A stretch of 63,072 nucleotides of DNA, the filler included, from Octopus bimaculoides (Eukaryota), in the NCBI RefSeq assembly GCF_001194135.2. It is 5 parts of 4 records of this genome, joined end to end, with 100 filler letters (N's around TTAATTAATTAA, not from the genome) between each part and the next. Parts side by side here need not be neighbours in the genome. Positions count along the whole stretch, not along the records: positions 47,925 to 52,813 come from NC_068997.1; 4 more parts are not named here. One strand, given 5' to 3'. Both the position numbers and the translations under genes were made by a program. Each line of letters opens with the position of its first letter. Within the stretch, counting starts at the first letter, position 1. This document shows positions 1,965 to 52,951 of this stretch, in pieces. The notes below the pieces were generated by a model, which searched no databases, had not been told where the DNA came from, and was given only the letters and a program-made list of their open reading frames with translations.

Positions 1965-2870
1965 ATATATATAAACATGGTATACAGATATTTGAATATT
2001 CATGCACATAACTGAAACAGCAAATATATTACAGTGTTACACTCGAAACTGAATAAATACACAACGTACCTCTAAGCATACATTCAATAGTCACACATAC
2101 TTACATTTGCACGCATTCATACAGCAGACTACAAAACAATGCTGCGCACGCGCGCACACACAAGTCGATGCACACACATACATATACGCGTGCATGCATA
2201 CTGACAAAAGATACTAGATTCACAGTCACGTTTACGCATCCAACTAATAACATTTGCCTAACCTAGCGGCTTCCCTCGACTAAATTCGAGCTGGTTGCTT
2301 TTGAAAGCCAAAATAAACAAATTGAAATAAATAAATAAATAAATAAATAAATAAATATATTGAAGAAATGAGATTGGAAGAAAACTAAACATGAAAAAGA
2401 CAGCTAAAGAAAATAATGGAAGGATAAAAATAAAGAAATGAATAATTGAAATAGAATAGTGATCAATATTCTTCTCGAAAATTCGAAAATGCTGCTGCTT
2501 CTTGTCTCCATTTATCCGCGAAGCTAAACTATATGGCATTCCAAAGAATGAAAAACACGACAACACGCAAGTCAGGACGACTTTAGTTTCCGTCATATTC
2601 TCTTTAAAAAAAAACACACACAAATTACGAGAGAACAACAGCAACAAAATCAATTTTGGACATAGTGCTGTTGCTCCGTATTTTGTGAATAAGGTTCTTT
2701 TGTCCGAAGATATAGTCAGGGTTTTTTGGGGGTTTTTTTCTATTCTCAAATCCCAAAATATGTTTTGTTAGTCTTCCGTGATGTAAAAAAGTAATCTTTG
2801 AGCATGAAAACGTTAGCAGGCTGAATTTACAGGAATCTACATAATCGACAAATATATTATATGCATATAT

Positions 2871-2912
<42 letters not shown>

Positions 2913-3233
2913 NNNNNNNNNNNNNNNNNNNNNNNNNNNNNNNNNNNNNNNNNNNNNNNNNNNNNNNNNNNNNNNNNNNNNNNNNNNNNNNNNNNNNNNN
3001 NNNNNNNNNNNNNNNNNNNNNNNNNNNNNNNNNNNNNNNNNNNNNNNNNNNNNNNNNNNNNNNNNNNNNNTATATATATATGATATATATATATGATTTA
3101 TTCATTAGGCCTGACAATGTTGATGGACAATTGTTTGGCAAATATCAAACTTTCAATAGAAACACTCGCTTACACACAAATGCATGCACATGCATCTTCA
3201 AACGTGTATAAATTTATGTGTCCGTGCGTAGAA

Positions 3234-3264
<31 letters not shown>

Positions 3265-5951
3265 AGGAAGAAAGAGAGAGCGAGCAAAAGAGACGCGCAC
3301 ACATATTGTTGCTTGTTGAAAGTGTTTGAGATTTGCAAGGAGTGAGGGGAGATGTGTTGCACTCGTGCATTGACAAGTGGATATTAGAGAGACATAATGA
3401 ATGAAGAGAGAAGTTGTTTCGTCGTGCCAATACAATATGTATACATATATTACCAATACAATATATATTTGTTGATGATCATGTTATTTACAACCAACCT
3501 AGTAACACTAAACGGAAGTGAAACTAAGCAGAAAATATCTGTTACTCGCCCTGTTGGACACATTTGGCTCATACTTCCGGCATAAAATATATGTCATCGA
3601 TCTACTGGCAGATAATTGTTGTGTATGATTTGGACAACCTGTCAGACATTGTCCTCGTGCAATGTATATTAATATAGGTCAGGTCGATGATTTCCATTTA
3701 TCGCAAGTTATAAACATGATATCATTTGACATCTGCACAGCAAACTAAATGGCTAAGAAATGTGTGTCGAACAAGAAGATAACTTGTCAGTTATACAATG
3801 TTTACAGTGGTGATTCCCTTCACTTAAATATTTATTCATGCCAATTTAGTGTCCTGGCCAAGAGCACAACACTGAACTGATAACTTCATGTAAATTATAT
3901 ACCCTGCGATTGGTACTTTGACACCTCACAGACCAGGCTAGTGGCACAGCAATGCTATTTTATTAGTTTGATGTCATAAAAATTTAGAAACTTCCCGGAG
4001 AACATGAAATAATTATTTTTGGTACATTGAATTTCGAAGCTGGTAAACCAACAAATAATAGCGTTTTCTATCCTAACTAGAAAAGTAGAAGGCTTTACAG
4101 GAGATGTGGGTTCATGCCCAATGGGCAGCCTTCGACTTGTTTTATCCAAAGAGTTTTTAACCCAATATTTACACACGGCGATGGATCAGCATGGCCGCAG
4201 CTCTGAGCTGAAACTATAAACAACAACACTGTTATTTATAGCTTTATCTGCTTCAAGATTCACCGTTCCATAAACGAGCTTATTAGTATTTGAATCTTTT
4301 AGTTAATACATAACAGCATATTCAGTAAACAAGATAACCAATAAGTTTAAGATCCATAGAGCTTATTATTGGAACATAAATTTATTTATCACGAATGCGG
4401 TGCCTTCAGGTAAGACATCATGTGATATTTGTCTTTTATATGATATTCACGTCTTGCGTAAATCGATTTGGTGACGCATAATGTGCTATATGCAGTTTAT
4501 CTGATCGGTGCGGTGTTCTCGTGATGTTCGTCATGTGATATATATCGCCTGTTTTTTGGTACCATACTCATATGATATTTGTCCATTATCTGATCGATAT
4601 CATTTCCTATGATGTATAACTGTCCATCAGTTGAGTAAAATATCGAGTAATTATTTGCTGGCATTTTGATCGCTAAGATATTCATATTTACGGTCCAACT
4701 GATCGGTGTGATACCGTGTGACTTTTCATCATACATTACATCGGAGAAATATGCCTTGTAATATTTGTCATTCGTCTGATCAATGACATTATGCATGGCA
4801 CATCATGTGATCGAAGCCACCAAATCAGTCAGATTGGTCGGATATACTACGACAAATATCCACAGTAGAGAGCTATATACGTTATCTCTGGTTAACTTCC
4901 GTGGAGAATACATGACCTAGTTGATAAATTATTGGCATTGTCACATCTTCGTAATCTGCGGTCGGAATACTATGATACATTCGCAGTAATAACATTTGTT
5001 ATTTCCATCCCCACCCCATCACCAATCACAACAGCAACAACACAAATTTTGCTGTTGTGTTGTTATTTAGACTCGAGTTAACCCTGATCGAAATGACTTA
5101 TGATTAAAACGTCCCATTTTTGACTATACTGCCTCGTAGTATGTCAAAAGTTGTGTCCTTCTTTATTTGATATAAAAGGTCGTGATTTTGTAACAGAGTT
5201 GGTTGCTATTTTAGCAGCTTGTGGAATGAGAAAGTTAAGAAATGTACTTGCTTGGCCAGATCAGGGGCCCACAACAACTAGGAGTGTGAAGTTTCTCATC
5301 CTAACAATATTTAGGTACCAGGATTGTTGGAATTCTTAACAATGTAATCTATGTCAGGTCAAGTAGGCGACTAGACTTTTAAATATTTAATTTGCTAGAA
5401 AGCGTAACTAAATACTAGTCCTACGATACTTGAAGTTCATTCATAAATAATGCAGAATAAAAACATCAGGTAGTTCTATTTATTTCGTAGTTTAGAAAAC
5501 GGTATATATTGTGGATTGATAATTTCTGTTTGATGTTTATTTGAATATGATATAATGCCACTGTCTAGTGCCTTAACATGCCATATGATTATCAAACATG
5601 CCTGTTTATAAAGTTATATGTTGTATGGTTATGAAATGGTCTTATGGTGTTATAATAATGGTGATTATGGTTATAATTTGGAATAAGGTCGTTACAGATT
5701 ATTGTGAGCCGAGTCCTGATCGAACATATATACTATCAAACGCTTACTATTTATTACCATAGTGTTTTTTTCTTTTTCATACGTATTGCAAATAACACTA
5801 TGTTATGCAAATATGACGTTTTCAAAGACAGCATGTGATATGAAGGAAATTTTGTTATTTCAATTTGTCCGAGCGATTGCATAGAGGCTCAATATACAAT
5901 ATAGTTATAATAGGGCAGTTATGATGAAGTAGTAGATTTTTTTTTTTTGCA

Positions 5952-47824: not shown

Positions 47825-48015
47825 NNNNNNNNNNNNNNNNNNNNNNNNNNNNNNNNNNNNNNNNNNNNTTAATTAATTAANNNNNNNNNNNNNNNNNNNN
47901 NNNNNNNNNNNNNNNNNNNNNNNNATATATATATATATAATAAACTTGGCTTATTCATAATTTACAACCGAAAGGCAGAAGTATAGACGTCACTAACGGG
48001 ACTAAAACTATTGGC

Positions 48016-48093
48016 TGGCACCAGCATTGCTAGAAATAAAAGTCAAAACAACTCATATTCCTTTGACTATTATTTCTAGCAATGCTGGTGCTA
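48016..48093. repeat. Near-perfect inverted repeat (30-bp arms, 14-nt loop)
   Basis: gcaccagcattgctagaaataaaagtcaaa (48018-47) vs tttgactattatttctagcaatgctggtgc (48062-91): 29/30 complementary. Confidence 0.95.
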
Positions 48094-50356
48094 ACTTGTA
48101 CCATTGATAATTTTATATATGACAGGCTTCATCCAGTTTCTCTCTACGAAGCACATCACAATGTTTTGATCGGCTCATGTCTATAGTATATGACCCTTGC
48201 CCAAGATACCACACAGTGTAACATAACTCATAACCCATGTAGTTTGGAAACAAACTTCTTAGTACACTGACCTGCCAGCGCCTATTTTTAGTGCAGATTC
48301 ATTTACATACACACATTTCCACAAAATCACACACTCTTTTGACTACGTAGAACATCATATTTAACGATATTTGAACGTTTAACATGAGTAGATAATAAGA
48401 TGATAATAGTAGTTTGTGCAAACTATTGTACGATGTCAGTGCTTGCTTAAGGTGTAAGATTTACGCAGTAATTTCAAGCAAGATTATGTTTAAGAAAAGA
48501 ATTTTATGATAATTTCATTGATTAATTTGCAATTTGATACCAAGTGAACAAGTACACAATATTATTAATAACTTTTCTTTATTTTTAGTTATTTTCTTTT
48601 TCGATTTATGAGCTCACATTTTCTTCGTCATTTAGTTATATTAAAAATATTTCGAAAATCTATTTTGTTTCACAGAAATTTTATTTCTTTTGTTTCATTT
48701 CCTAAATAATTATTGACTTCATGTGTTTAATATTAGTGTTGATACAGAATTTTAATTGTGAAAATTAGTCCTTGATTGAATAATTTTAAATATCTCCGAA
48801 TTGTGACCCAGAATATTCTTTATGATATATAAACAGTCAGGTTATGTCTCTCTATCTCCCCTCTGTCACAAAAAATGTATATATACATACATACGTATGT
48901 TTGTATATGTTTGGAGAGAGAGAGAGAGGAGGAGGAGGAGGAGATTCAATGATGTGATCCTATGTACCAACACACATTCACGAAGTAAGAATTGTCCTAT
49001 AAAAATATATGGTTCACCGCACCTTTCTCACTAAATGATTTGCACAAATTGGGAAAAAGTTGATAGCCTTCTTACATAAGCATTTCCTTGCCATCCGTGG
49101 ATATAGAAATATCTTTAATAGACTTTTAATAGGCGTTATCTGATAAACTACAAGATACGCTATAGCTGCAATGCCAATATTAAGACAATGACGTTACATA
49201 GATGCATGAAACTAACTATTGTAAAAAGTGCGTGGACAAATGCAGATTCTTGCCTACAGGATACGGTATGGAACATTAGTTCCGCAGCATACAAATCCGA
49301 AGTCACCTCAAACAAATAAAATAAAATGAATGATAAGAAAACTATTTTCGTATGTATGGGAGTGATTTCAAGCATGTATTTTATAATCACATATCATCAT
49401 TCATCCACACGAAAGAAATACGACGACATTAGCAAATCACATCTGGTAACTGAGGGGCAACATAATGCTTATACCATCAAATGGTGTCCCTTAGAAAGAT
49501 CAATGCTGTACGTGAATGTATCAAATCATATGCAAACTCTTAAAATGAGAAGGAACTTATGTTCTGATAAAATCGATGTGTCAAAATAGATATTTAAATT
49601 TCATAACTGAAATTGTCAACAGATATATCCATCAAGACAAGTTAATCTGATCTATTTGGAAAACAATTCCTATTACGTGTATAATTCGAATTTCTATGCT
49701 GTGACAAACGTACAAAGTAGCACCAAATTCGGCATGTCGACAAAAGACAGAAACGAAATACGAATTTACTTGAATATTCAAAACAGCTATAACATTACAT
49801 GCACTAACAAAAAGAGAAATAAAGACAGATGTTAAACGATGCACTATACTTTCAAATGCACTTGCAACATCTGTGTTCCAAATAACTACAATGGTGAAAC
49901 GTACGTAGAAACTAATAAATTTTAAAATTGTACTTTTAATTTTCTACTACCATTACTTAAAAGATACGATTTCTGCTATATAAGAAAACCTTCCTCTGTT
50001 TACGAAAGTGAATAATTGCTGACGTTGTAAGAGGAACAACCAATGTTTTAAATACTAGTTACTGGCTATTCGAGGCAAAACAAACAATTACTTTGAATTA
50101 ATGCTTATTCTCATTATTGCACGTATTGAAAAAAAAAAAAAAACATGTCTCAAGTCTGAAAAGAGAAATGCTGGTGAAAAGTGACAACGGTATAAGCTAA
50201 TCTATGTTTCTTTCAACTGAAATTAAACATAACTGTTTTTTCTCAAATAAAATATATAAAATATTTATAAGTCAGTAAAGTATTTGATAGATATACACAA
50301 AAGAATCATTTTGTTATATATATCTAAATTTATGTGCGTGTGGTTATACGTGTGTG

Positions 50357-50395
<39 letters not shown>

Positions 50396-50396
50396 T

Positions 50397-50796
50397 AGAA
50401 TATTATATATATTTTCGAACGAAGATTTAGCAGTGCCATCTCAGCCAAAGTATTATTCTGTGCCGACGAAGGGAAATAACCCTGAAACCGTGCAGTCCAC
50501 AGAAACTGCTTTGTGCTAGGTGGGGGTGCTAAACTCCTCTGTTCGAAAATATGAGGACACAGATTGTGTAATATAGTCAGCTGGAGACAATGTCTCCTGG
50601 GGCTAAACAACAGGAGCATTAATCCCAACCGGGACTGCCACATCAGGCTGGCAGATAGCCTTTACTTTAAAGTACTACTACTGAATATCTCTCGTTGAGA
50701 AATTTTGGAGCAATAATGTTTCTGTTTATTAGATCTGTAACTGTGTGTCAGAATATTATGTTTTCGAAGGAGGATTTAGCAGCGCCAACTCAGTAG
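50397..50796 (+). mobile_element. Retrozyme-like element: ~353-bp unit plus partial direct repeat
   Basis: agaatattat...ttttcgaa.ga.gatttagcag.gcca.ctcag occurs at 50397 and again at 50750. The unit holds the HHR inside an inverted repeat (50409-50433 vs 50527-50552). Confidence 0.75.
50456..50504 (+). ncRNA. Type I hammerhead ribozyme (U4C core variant)
   Basis: Stem I UUCUGUG (50456-62)/CACAGAA (50498-504); core CCGACGA (50463-69); stem II AGGG/CCCU with loop AAAUAA; GAAAC (50484-88); stem III AC/GU with loop CGUGCA; GUC cleavage triplet 50495-97. Confidence 0.85.
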
Positions 50797-51770
50797 CATA
50801 GTTATGTTATAAAAAGTTTTTTTAGGGAATATTTCTAAAAGAAATATTCCAGCGTCGGAAAGTTACCAATTTAGCAAACATTACTATGCATCACCAATTT
50901 TAAAATTGACAAGCAATAGAAAAATGTCACATTGAAAAATAAGATGAAAAACGTTATTTAAACTCGTTTTGGCTTCAGGTGCTTGATGATCCTTCGTTGA
51001 CTGTGGAAAGGCCATATTTCAGGTTGTTAAATTTGGAGTTTTGATTATATGTATATGAATGGGTAAATTGATGCGTGTGAGTGTATGTATGTGCGCGCGT
51101 GTGACTGCGTGTGTACAGGTTAAATAAGACTTGAGTCGTGACAGGTATGTGTATTCACCTGTATAAATGTGATCGTGTGTATGTGTGCATTTGCGCGTAT
51201 GTATATATGGGCGAGACGGAGGTAGTTAGGATATGTTTACATGATTGACATATCTGTGTGTGTAAGTGAGTGCGCGCGCCTGTGTTTGTGTATTTACGTA
51301 TGTGATTGTTTGTATATATATGTACATATGTATATGTATGTGTGCTTTAGACTCAGTCTGTTAGTGTATGTATCCGTAAATGTGTTTGTTTTTTCATTAT
51401 TTCTTTTTATTTGTGCTGATGAAAAACACTTTTCATCTTTGAATTTTTTATTAGCATCTGTTTTTATTTATTTAGTATCTGTGATTACTTTTTATTGTCT
51501 TTGTGATGTTTTATTCTTTTGTGTATTGTTTTATATATCATTTACTCTATTTTGTTTTATTGTTTTATGTTTTATTATTGTATCGTCGAAGAAAGAGAAG
51601 ACAAATCTTATTAAACCCGTTATTTTTCTAAATTCTTACAAGTCGAAGCTTCACTATCACTGTCATTTTTCCTGGTTGTCTCTCTATTTTCCCATGCTCA
51701 TTTTTCTTTCTACTTCTCTCTTCCTTTCTTTCTTTATTCCTCTTTCACTCTCTTGCTCTCTCTCTCTCTT

Positions 51771-51804
<34 letters not shown>

Positions 51805-51814
51805 NNNNNNNNNN

Positions 51815-51858
<44 letters not shown>

Positions 51859-52357
51859 TTTCAATATTTCTTTAGTTCATCTATCTCTTTGTTCTCTTAC
51901 TTGATCCCTCTCCATCTCTTCAGCATCCCTTGATCTTCCGTCAGAGCCATATGTCCTTTTTCTTACACTTTCTCTCTCCATCTTTTTCCTTTCCTCATTT
52001 CTTTCTTTCTTTCTTTCTTTCTCTCTCTCTCTCTCTCTCTCCCCATCTTTATTTAGTGTTTCTATCATATTTTTCTCTTACTTACTCCTTCTTCATCACT
52101 TCAGCATCCCTTCATCTTCCTTCTGACTAATTTGCCCTCCTTTCTCTCACCCTTCCCCTCTCAAACTCTTTCACGCTCTCTCTTTCTCTTTCTCTCTCTC
52201 TCAATTATTATCTTCTGTCGTTTCAATCTTTCTACATCTTTACCATTGCCATATTTCATCGGTCGTTTTCTTCTACAGTGTCAGATTACAAGTTTCACTT
52301 CTTTGGGGTTTATGCCATTTTCCCACTCTCTCTAACACACACGCACACGCATACACG

Positions 52358-52388
<31 letters not shown>

Positions 52389-52439
52389 ACTCACACGCAC
52401 ACATATAACTTACACGTACACAGGAACATGTCAGTTCCT

Positions 52440-52540
52440 TCCCACCAAGAGCAAGTGTCTTCTACTATAGCCTCGGGTCGACCAAAGCCTTGTGAGTAGA
52501 TTTGGTAGACGGAAACTGAAAGAAGCCCGTCGTATATATG
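52440..52540 (+). mobile_element. SINE family A fragment
   Basis: gcaagtgtcttctactatagcctcgggtcgaccaaagccttgtgagtagatttggtagacggaaactg. Confidence 0.8.
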
Positions 52541-52951
52541 TGTGTGTATATATATATGACCATACGTGTACTGATGAACAAATGAATACAGGTTACTTCA
52601 CAGTTTTTTCTGTATTTGATTGCGAAGCCAGTGGTCTACCGTTGAGTTAAATGTTTTTAAGAGATACATTTTGAAAAGCTGCATTCCCTCGCTTTCGGTA
52701 AATATGTTACTTATTTTTAGTAGTTTTTTTACTTATTTAGTCCCTCGATAGCGTGTGGCATTGATGCACAGTTAATGCCCTTTATATATTATTAAATATA
52801 TCTATGAAGAAACNNNNNNNNNNNNNNNNNNNNNNNNNNNNNNNNNNNNNNNNNNNNTTAATTAATTAANNNNNNNNNNNNNNNNNNNNNNNNNNNNNNN
52901 NNNNNNNNNNNNNCGGTAGTGAAGTGAAAGCACGTTATAAAAATAAAACTA

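What the first reader, a model, noticed from the sequence alone, without database searches (positions are those of the whole stretch)
50397..50796. Complete type I hammerhead ribozyme in a ~350-nt self-complementary retrozyme-like unit
Seen: UUCUGUG-CCGACGA-AGGG(AAAUAA)CCCU-GAAAC-CGUGCA-GUC|CACAGAA at 50456-50504 has a perfect 7-bp stem I, a 4-bp stem II and a GUC triplet. The only change from the CUGANGA core is U4C. The motif sits inside an inverted repeat (50409-50433 vs 50527-50552), and the unit start repeats 353 bp downstream. Known: non-autonomous retrozymes in metazoans are 150-400-nt tandem units with a minimal type I HHR, processed into small circular RNAs and linked to Penelope-like elements. 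Inference: this is a cephalopod retrozyme family member that no ORF-based annotation would show.
Basis: partly seen in the sequence, partly recalled or inferred. Interest (0 to 1): 0.9.

Follow-up and report, generated by a model that had tools for sequence, protein, structure and literature searches.

The report
Decayed hammerhead retrozyme copy, old repeat
The hammerhead-ribozyme-like motif is really there and belongs to a repeat family of hundreds to thousands of copies whose consensus is a textbook animal type I hammerhead, but this copy is an old, mutated, single-ribozyme relic that is not detectably transcribed, so it is an ordinary member of a known class of mobile elements.

Summary
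Observation confirmed. The motif lies at 50456-50504 exactly as read, inside a long hairpin. The start of the unit recurs 349-353 bp downstream.

It is not chance. My descriptor gave one hit in the piece and none as good in 2000 shuffles. DNA reads and contigs of the same organism and of two other species labels show a family of hundreds to about 1,500 copies of the ribozyme half, and 3,000-4,000 copies of a central domain.

In that family position 4 reads U in 77-97% of the sequence depth. The majority sequence is a canonical metazoan type I hammerhead: CUGAUGA, a 6-bp helix I, a short helix II, and a 2-3 bp helix III with a palindromic loop. Head-to-tail junctions about 330-356 bp apart occur at several other loci.

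The retrozyme-like assignment is therefore supported for the family. This locus is a relic:
- U4C in the core.
- Two changes that destroy the helix III palindrome.
- Only one ribozyme in 1.13 units, so no circle can be excised.
- The insertion is apparently shared with two other species.
- No RNA reads from it and no circular joints.
- No Rfam hammerhead hit.

Verdict: new member of a known kind. Interest is modest.

The parts
50350..50391 (.). (GT)21 microsatellite abutting the 5' boundary of the unit. The next bases, TACTT-AGAATATT, resemble the unit-to-unit junction GTGTGTCA-T-TTAGAATATT seen at other loci.
   Evidence: joint 50750>50395 with T between
50395..50749 (+). One full repeat unit (~353-355 nt, 41.6% G+C, no ORF with homologues)
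50750..50793 (+). Partial second unit (first ~44-47 nt of the unit, 81-86% identical to 50397-50444). It stops before its own ribozyme would begin.
50408..50553 (+). Long imperfect hairpin that extends helix I. The left arm is present in only about 12-27 copies and the right arm in a few hundred, so the hairpin is a subfamily feature.
50456..50504 (+). Type I hammerhead-like motif. Helix I 50456-62/50498-504. Core C3-A9 50463-69, with C instead of U4 at 50464. Helix II 50470-73/50480-83 with loop AAAUAA. G12-A14 at 50484-86. Helix III A50487-U50496 and C50488-G50495 with loop CGUGCA. C17 = 50497. Predicted cut between 50497 and 50498.
50464..50464 (+). U4C: C here, T in 77-87% of related DNA reads and 88-97% of related contig depth in three species labels
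50492..50494 (+). Two substitutions relative to the closest relatives (G for A at 50492, A for G at 50494). They turn the palindrome ACCGUACGGU (3-bp helix III plus GUAC loop) into the non-palindromic ACCGUGCAGU.
50549..50620 (+). Central domain of the unit, the most repeated part (about 3,000-4,000 copy equivalents in three species labels)

Best explanation
The locus is an ancient, fixed, decayed 1.13-unit copy of a short, ORF-less, retrozyme-like repeat family carrying a hammerhead ribozyme.

Inferred mechanism for the family: tandem units are transcribed. The type I hammerheads have a short helix III with a palindromic loop, so they probably act best as dimers between neighbouring units. 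They cut after position 17, releasing unit-length RNA. A host RNA ligase can circularise that RNA, and a Penelope-like reverse transcriptase copies it back into DNA. Copying a circular or multimeric template gives insertions longer than one unit, with a terminal redundancy. The 44-47-nt second-unit stub and the microsatellite-side junction here fit that.

Shown here: the motif, the unit structure, the family size, the canonical family consensus, head-to-tail junctions elsewhere, the presence of the family in three species labels, and the lack of transcription of this copy.

Inferred: self-cleavage, circularisation, and mobilisation by a Penelope-like element.

This particular copy has one ribozyme only, U4C in the core and a broken helix III palindrome. 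It is most likely inactive or at best very weakly active, and has no function of its own.
For: The motif is present and unique in the piece, with 0 of 2000 shuffles as good.

Family size. Raw DNA reads at about 1x single-copy depth give depth 209-262 over 50461-82 and 1,229-1,707 over 50571-92. Whole-run contigs have single-copy word depth 55.9 and 22.4. They give about 1,300-1,600 copy equivalents for the ribozyme 5' half, 3,500-4,000 for the central domain, and about 12-27 for the unit ends.

Family consensus. Position 50464 is T in 79%, 77% and 87% of reads. N7 (50467) is T, C or G. C3, A6, G8, A9 and G12 show no variant at 5% or more. Most relatives continue after GAAA with UCGCGAUA|CACAGAU (93-123 reads per run, agreement 0.76-0.85). 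That gives CUGAUGA, a 6-bp helix I, and helix III A-U/U-A with loop CGCG.

The window-like subfamily reads ACCGUACGGUC|CACAGAU. Minor variants read ACCGCGGU and ACCAUGGU. All four helix III versions are perfect palindromes, which is the hallmark listed for metazoan type I and PLE hammerheads (PMC4209133). Predicted self-duplex energies are -17.8 and -12.1 kcal/mol for the two consensus forms against -4.4 for the window copy.

Head-to-tail joints 333-356 nt apart occur at single-copy depth in DNA contigs, in at least six forms in organism A and others in organisms B and C. One of them runs on into a second ribozyme.

The family has similar copy numbers, with T at position 4 in 95-97% of depth, in two other species labels. 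Single-copy contigs there cover the unit (95% identity), the right flank (95-97%) and the unit-end/stub/flank junction.

RNA: 0 reads at 99% or better, and depth 0-2 at the unit ends.

G+C is 41.6%, there is no ORF with homologues and no tRNA-like part.

Literature: anatomy of non-LTR retrozymes and their monomer offspring (PMC7229834; bioRxiv 10.64898/2026.07.22.740005). Octopus genomes hold Penelope elements (PMC13282606, PMC8967140).
Against: No Rfam hammerhead model matches this copy, even at E<=10.

No full sequence of a relative could be fetched. The family consensus is pieced together from per-site read tables and loose-end consensus strings, and linkage between sites is unknown. In particular I could not tell whether the window's closest relatives (about 8-30 copies) carry U or C at position 4.

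The ribozyme half is conserved as a whole, loop 2 included, so conservation is not specific to the core.

The base of helix II is an A opposite U, A or G, not the usual G10.1-C11.1 pair.

No evidence of cleavage ends or circles was seen. The RNA reads come from other copies, and the most abundant of these has a mutated core (A6C) and is read through.

Copy numbers differ more than 100-fold along the unit. The family is therefore modular, and the ribozyme may be a passenger.

The organism and its Penelope-like elements were not examined directly.
Confidence: 0.75

Rival explanations
1. The locus is a live retrozyme. Its U4C hammerhead still cleaves, and the unit is released and circularised as a ~350-nt RNA.
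For: All three helices and 10 of the 11 conserved core positions are intact. A natural U4C variant keeps enough activity in vivo for viroid infectivity (PMC3088659). C at this position is found in 13-23% of related reads, so it may mark a subfamily that spread.
Against: There is only one ribozyme at the locus. The second unit ends 12 nt before its helix I would start, so no monomer can be excised. The helix III palindrome needed for dimer action is broken. No RNA reads match the locus and there are no back-joints. The insertion appears older than the split of three species labels. The two copies of the unit start differ by 14-19%.
Confidence: 0.05
2. The unit is not an independent retrozyme. 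It is a fragment or derivative of the terminal repeat (pLTR) of an autonomous Penelope-like element, or a SINE-like composite that picked up that module. The hammerhead is a passenger and the ~350-nt periodicity is secondary.
For: Copy numbers differ more than 100-fold along the unit: central domain 3,000-4,000, ribozyme half 750-1,600, unit ends about 12-27. That indicates shuffled modules. Retrozymes and pLTRs are homologous in frogs (bioRxiv 10.64898/2026.07.22.740005). Partial tandems with 30-40-bp tails and microsatellite targets are typical of Penelope-like insertions (PMC8557442). Octopus annotations list about 900 unclassified SINE families (PMC13282606).
Against: The piece holds no reverse transcriptase or endonuclease ORF. 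Head-to-tail joints lie one short unit apart (333-356 nt), not kilobases. The ribozyme has the canonical retrozyme-type architecture (helix I 6 bp, II 4 bp, short palindromic III). It does not have the min-HHR architecture of pLTRs, which is a long helix II, a short helix I and no helix III (PMC4209133). There is no tRNA-like head.
Confidence: 0.15
3. Chance resemblance: a hammerhead-like string in a structured repeat, with no ribozyme ancestry.
For: The motif is simple. One core position is wrong, and Rfam models do not recognise it. In a genome of about 2.5 Gb some relaxed descriptor hits are expected by chance, since 4 of 2000 shuffled 4.9-kb pieces gave one.
Against: The majority sequence of hundreds of relatives in three species labels corrects the one mismatch to CUGAUGA. 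It also supplies a better helix III. Four different helix III versions are all palindromic.
Confidence: 0.03

Closest known systems
Metazoan non-LTR retrozymes (Cervera & de la Pena 2020, PMC7229834), e.g. mussel, coral and axolotl repeats of 170-400 nt
   Same: Unit of about 350 nt, low G+C (41.6%), no ORF, LTR, PBS or PPT. One type I hammerhead per unit, with helix I of 6-7 bp and helix II of 4 bp. Helix III is 2-3 bp with a palindromic loop. Head-to-tail copies occur in the genome, at hundreds to thousands of copies. Solitary 'monomer' offspring are known (bioRxiv 10.64898/2026.07.22.740005).
   Different: This locus is 1.13 units with one ribozyme, U4C and a degraded helix III. No linear or circular unit-length RNA was seen. 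The base of helix II is A opposite U/A/G instead of G-C. No cephalopod family was found in the papers I could search.
Newt/salamander satellite 2 hammerheads (HHR_Amex1/2 repeats of 330-350 bp)
   Same: Same unit size. Weak helix III of 1-2 bp with a palindromic tetraloop, implying action as dimers in tandem transcripts (PMC7229834).
   Different: Those form very large arrays (up to about 126,000 motifs) and are abundantly transcribed. Here the copies appear mostly dispersed or in short partial tandems, and this one is silent.
min-HHRs in the terminal repeats of Penelope-like elements (Cervera & de la Pena 2014, PMC4209133)
   Same: Palindromic positions around helix III. An extra nucleotide after A9. 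Partial-tandem insertion structure. A microsatellite at the boundary (PMC8557442).
   Different: min-HHRs have helix II of 7-8 bp, helix I of 4-5 bp and no helix III, and they flank an RT-endonuclease ORF. None of this is seen here.
Schistosoma Sm-alpha SINE-like elements with hammerheads
   Same: Short dispersed non-autonomous repeat carrying a type I hammerhead at thousands of copies.
   Different: Sm-alpha has a tRNA-like pol III head (my own knowledge). No tRNA-like sequence is detected here.

Membership tests
Hammerhead ribozyme, type I | Conserved core C3-U4-G5-A6-N7-G8-A9 ... G12-A13-A14 ... U16.1-H17 | tested here: not met
   This copy has C at position 4 (50464) and all other positions fit. 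The family majority has U4 (77-97%) and so meets the feature. U4C lowers activity considerably in vitro but is tolerated in one viroid in vivo (PMC3088659).
Hammerhead ribozyme, type I | Three helices around the core, open end in helix I | tested here: met
   Helix I 7 bp, II 4 bp, III 2 bp. Only hit of the descriptor in the piece, and 0 of 2000 shuffles as good. The minimum-energy fold forms helices I and II.
Hammerhead ribozyme, type I | Match to a curated covariance model (Rfam hammerhead families) | tested here: not met
   No hammerhead family listed at E<=10, on the whole piece or on 50440-50520 alone.
Hammerhead ribozyme, type I | Site-specific self-cleavage after position 17 | not testable with these tools
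   No RNA read ends pile up at 50497/50498, but depth there was only about 15 and came from other copies.
Hammerhead ribozyme, type I | Loop 1 - loop 2 tertiary contacts | not tested
   Loop 2 AAAUAA is invariant in the family. An internal loop lies 7 bp from the core in helix I. No test of a contact was possible.
Metazoan non-LTR retrozyme | Short (150-450 bp) head-to-tail repeats, each with a type I hammerhead | tested here: inconclusive
   This locus has 1.13 units and one ribozyme. At other loci, joints 333-356 nt apart occur at single-copy depth in three species labels, and one continues into a second ribozyme. Array lengths are unknown.
Metazoan non-LTR retrozyme | Non-coding, no LTR/PBS/PPT, G+C below about 45-50% | tested here: met
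   G+C 41.6%. The only ORF over the unit (82 aa, minus strand) has no homologue.
Metazoan non-LTR retrozyme | Expressed as unit-length linear and circular RNA | tested here: inconclusive
   Three RNA-seq runs, about 6% of each read. Reads come only from relatives at 85-95% identity, none at 99% or better. There are no back-joints, and depth is 0-2 at the unit ends. The library type is probably not suited to small circles.
Metazoan non-LTR retrozyme | Co-occurrence with, and similarity to, Penelope-like elements | not testable with these tools
   No eukaryotic genome search was available. The literature reports Penelope elements in octopus genomes (PMC13282606, PMC8967140), but the organism here is coded.
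Penelope-like element terminal repeat (pLTR) with min-HHR | Flanks an RT + GIY-YIG ORF. min-HHR has a long helix II, a short helix I and no helix III. | tested here: not met
   No such ORF in 47925-52813. The helix sizes are of the canonical kind.
tRNA-derived SINE | tRNA-like head with A and B boxes | tested here: not met
   ARAGORN finds nothing in 50300-50900.

The most novel reading that the evidence does not exclude
The family seen here may be a cephalopod-wide, previously unannotated retrozyme system, hidden among 'unclassified SINEs'. It has 750-1,600 ribozyme-bearing copies and 3,000-4,000 copies of a shared central domain in each of three species labels. Within it, a subfamily with C at core position 4 may have kept spreading. 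That would mean either that U4C is tolerated in this scaffold or that mobilisation does not need cleavage.
Probability: 0.15. Interest if true: 0.55.

Novelty: new member of a known kind. Interest (0 to 1): 0.33.

Why it matters
Hammerhead-bearing retrozymes are a recognised but still thinly catalogued class of animal mobile elements and a natural source of small circular RNAs. ORF- and library-based repeat annotation misses them. Showing that an anonymous repeat of this genome is such a family would add a lineage to the catalogue. It would also give a handle on part of the 'unclassified' repeat load. The single locus examined is a dead copy, so it has no functional weight of its own.

Tried and rejected
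1. Rfam cmscan of the piece and of the 81-nt motif at E<=10 gave no hammerhead hit, only chance miRNA-like and other hits.
2. I tried to fetch relatives through spurious ORFs. The 82-aa minus-strand ORF over the unit found no homologue in the protein collection.
3. An exact-pattern scan of metagenome contigs for TGTGCYGAYGAAGGGAAATAACCC gave 0 matches.
Later calls started at 50395.
5. I tried to phase position 4 with the window-type helix III, by raising the identity threshold and by starting the reference at 50484 to read the overhang. Neither worked, because overhangs beyond the reference are not reported.
6. I searched for a remnant of an upstream unit beyond the (GT)n tract and for continuation of the array beyond 50900. 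Local alignment scores were within the shuffle range.
7. A tRNA-like head was rejected. Penelope ORFs nearby were rejected.
8. Literature searches for hammerhead or retrozyme together with cephalopod or octopus found nothing specific.

Full report
**1. What is in the sequence**

- UUCUGUG, 50456-62
- CCGACGA, 50463-69
- AGGG-AAAUAA-CCCU, 50470-83
- GAAA, 50484-87
- C-CGUGCA-G, 50488-95
- UC, 50496-97
- CACAGAA, 50498-504

In hammerhead numbering this gives the following:
- Helix I of 7 bp.
- C3, C4 (instead of U4), G5, A6, C7, G8, A9.
- Helix II of 4 bp with a 6-nt loop.
- G12, A13, A14.
- Helix III of only two pairs (A15.1-U16.1 and C15.2-G16.2) with loop CGUGCA.
- C17, with the predicted cut between 50497 and 50498.

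A descriptor I wrote required helix I of at least 5 bp, helix II of at least 3 bp, helix III of at least 2 bp, and at most one core mismatch. It finds only this site on either strand of the 4.9-kb piece. Of 2000 dinucleotide-preserving shuffles, four gave any hit and none gave one as good. That is strong for one piece. It is not strong for a genome of about 2.5 Gb, so the case rests on the relatives (section 2).

The surrounding structure is also as described:
- The motif sits at the tip of a ~145-nt imperfect hairpin. 50409-62 against 50498-552 is 79% over 57 nt, with perfect 12-nt outer arms.
- The 353-nt unit folds far better than shuffles (z = -6.35).
- The first 44-48 nt of the unit recur at 50750-50793 at 81-86% identity.

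No Rfam hammerhead family matches. This holds even when only 81 nt are searched at E<=10.

**2. Relatives**

No eukaryotic genome can be searched here. I therefore laid public reads and run-level contigs of the same (coded) organism on the window.

*Raw DNA reads.* Three runs give about 1x depth on the unique right flank. They give 209-262x over the ribozyme 5' half and 1,229-1,707x over 50571-92.

*Whole-run contigs.* Single-copy word depth is 55.9 and 22.4. Copy equivalents are:
- about 1,300-1,600 for 50461-82
- 3,500-4,000 for 50571-614
- about 350 for 50659-702
- only about 12-27 for the unit ends (50395-438, 50725-46)

The element is thus a member of a large and modular repeat family.

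*Family sequence at the ribozyme.* Position 50464 reads T in 79%, 77% and 87% of reads and in 88-89% of contig depth. Position 50467 (N7, free in the consensus) reads T, C or G. C3, A6, G8, A9 and G12 show no variant at 5% or more.

After GAAA most relatives leave the window sequence and read UCGCGAUACACAGAUAUUG. This is seen in 93-123 reads per run, with agreement 0.76-0.85. The majority ribozyme is therefore UCUGUG / CUGAUGA / A-GGG-AAAUAA-CCC-N / GAAA / U-CGCG-A / UA | CACAGA. It has a perfect core, a 6-bp helix I, and a helix III of two pairs closed by the palindromic tetraloop CGCG.

A smaller group shares the window's 3' half. It counts about 28 copy equivalents at 50492-94 and about 8 over 50484-92. 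It mostly reads A at 50492, G at 50494 and T at 50504. That gives GAAA-CC-GUAC-GG-UC | CACAGAU: a 3-bp helix III, a GUAC loop and a GUC triplet. Minor read groups give ACCGCGGU and ACCAUGGU (few reads, agreement 0.63-0.78).

All four helix III versions (AUCGCGAU, ACCGUACGGU, ACCGCGGU, ACCAUGGU) are perfect palindromes. Palindromy of 15.2-16.2 and loop 3 is one of the hallmarks given for metazoan type I and PLE hammerheads. It is thought to let two neighbouring ribozymes form one extended helix III (PMC4209133, PMC7229834).

Predicted self-duplex energies of that segment are -17.8 and -12.1 kcal/mol for the two consensus forms. For the window copy the value is -4.4, because its version ACCGUGCAGU is no longer a palindrome.

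**3. Tandem structure**

DNA contigs at single-copy depth contain joints that go back by roughly one unit:
- 50750>50395
- 50750>50398
- 50750>50404 (two or three variants)
- 50727>50395
- 50745>50443
- 50705>50443

So several other loci carry unit end joined to unit start. Given only about 12-27 copies with these ends, head-to-tail arrangement is common.

In another species label, one contig runs from the equivalent of the window's stub (50793) on to 50454. That is a second unit that continues into its ribozyme.

The junction at other loci reads GTGTGTCA-T-TTAGAATATT. The window's left boundary reads (GT)21-TACTT-AGAATATT. So the microsatellite may be an expansion of, or a microhomology target for, the unit's GTGTGTC end. 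I found no unit remnant further upstream and none beyond 50900. Penelope-like insertions are known for partial tandems, 30-40-bp tails and microsatellite targets (PMC8557442).

**4. Age and expression**

Two other species labels (runs X12, X14) hold the same family at similar relative copy numbers. The ribozyme half is at about 750-1,150 copies and the central domain at about 2,500-3,800. T at position 4 accounts for 95-97% of depth.

They also hold single-copy contigs that appear to be the orthologous locus:
- the whole unit (50395-50750, 19 differences)
- the right flank (50839-51030, 6-9 differences)
- in X14, one contig across unit end, stub and right boundary (50664-50863)

The insertion thus appears to predate the split of these species. 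This fits the 14-19% divergence between the two copies of the unit start.

In three RNA-seq runs (about 6% of each read), 297-393 reads were laid. None was at 99% or better and only one at 95-99%. Depth was 0-2 at the unit ends and no back-joint was seen. The most abundant related transcript has CUGCUGA (A6C) and a changed cleavage region. It is read through for about 80 nt, so it is a dead copy inside a longer RNA. There is thus no evidence for cleavage or circles. The libraries are probably not suited to small circles.

**5. Interpretation**

The family has the anatomy of metazoan non-LTR retrozymes:
- a unit of about 350 nt
- 41.6% G+C
- no coding capacity
- one canonical type I hammerhead per unit, with a short palindromic helix III
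- head-to-tail copies
- hundreds to thousands of members

By analogy with the studied cases (PMC7229834) the likely life cycle has three steps. Tandem units are transcribed. Hammerheads, favoured as dimers, release unit-length RNA. That RNA is then ligated to circles and reverse-transcribed by a Penelope-like element. These steps are inferred, not shown.

The window copy is a relic. It has U4C, two hits in helix III, one ribozyme only, old age and no transcripts.

U4C is not necessarily lethal. It 'considerably decreases activity in vitro' yet supports viroid infectivity (PMC3088659). Mutations in the CUGA turn give low activity in a comprehensive scan (PMC9901934).

I could not establish whether the window's closest relatives share the C. 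The share of C reads tracks the share of window-type reads across three runs, which hints that they might. That is too weak to claim.

**6. Rivals**

- A live retrozyme locus is unlikely (one ribozyme, silent, old).
- A pLTR fragment or a SINE-like composite with a passenger ribozyme remains possible, because copy number varies more than 100-fold along the unit. However, the short periodicity of the joints, the canonical rather than min-HHR architecture, and the lack of an RT ORF or tRNA head argue against it.
- Chance is excluded by the family consensus.

**7. Novelty**

Retrozymes with type I hammerheads are known from cnidarians to amphibians, including a mussel. Monomer offspring are described (bioRxiv 10.64898/2026.07.22.740005).

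I found no report for cephalopods in the searchable literature. Octopus repeat annotations list Penelope elements and about 900 unclassified SINE families (PMC13282606).

If the organism is indeed a cephalopod, this is a new member of a known kind. The organism's identity was not verifiable here, because names are coded. The genome size implied by depth and contig total is about 2-3 Gb.

Interest is modest. The finding is correct in substance, but the locus is a dead copy. The family, not this copy, is what would merit a systematic survey.

Noticed in passing
window 48018-48091: Near-perfect hairpin with 30-nt arms, 97% complementary, and a 14-nt loop. It drew a weak chance Rfam hit (HIV_POL-1_SL). 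Possibly a foldback or MITE-like element.
   Followed up: no
window 50813-50898: Fragment of a second repeat family (about 50-110 copy equivalents in organism A, also present in the two other species labels). It lies about 20 nt beyond the partial second unit. Relatives continue beyond 50898 with GTAACAAAGTACAGAAAGTCAACATTTATT, and many lack 50815-50856. An inverted repeat 50796-808/50877-889 spans it.
   Followed up: partly
window 50549-50620: The central domain of the unit is 2-3 times more abundant than the ribozyme half and more than 100 times more abundant than the unit ends, in all three species labels. It may be a module shared with other element types.
   Followed up: partly
window 50470 and 50483: The base of helix II is A opposite U in this copy, but A opposite A (38%) or G (38%) in relatives, instead of the usual G10.1-C11.1 pair. 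After N7 and U4 this is the most variable site of the ribozyme half.
   Followed up: partly
window 51815-52202: CT-rich tandem repeat, period 181 nt, 2.2 copies, 74% matches, flanked by (CT)n and (TTTC)n tracts.
   Followed up: no
window 50439-50487 (RNA runs X19-X21): The most abundant related transcript carries CUGCUGA (A6C) and UUGCGAUGUGCAGAUAUUG after GAAA, with agreement 0.93-0.97. It is a single expressed dead copy, probably inside a longer RNA.
   Followed up: no
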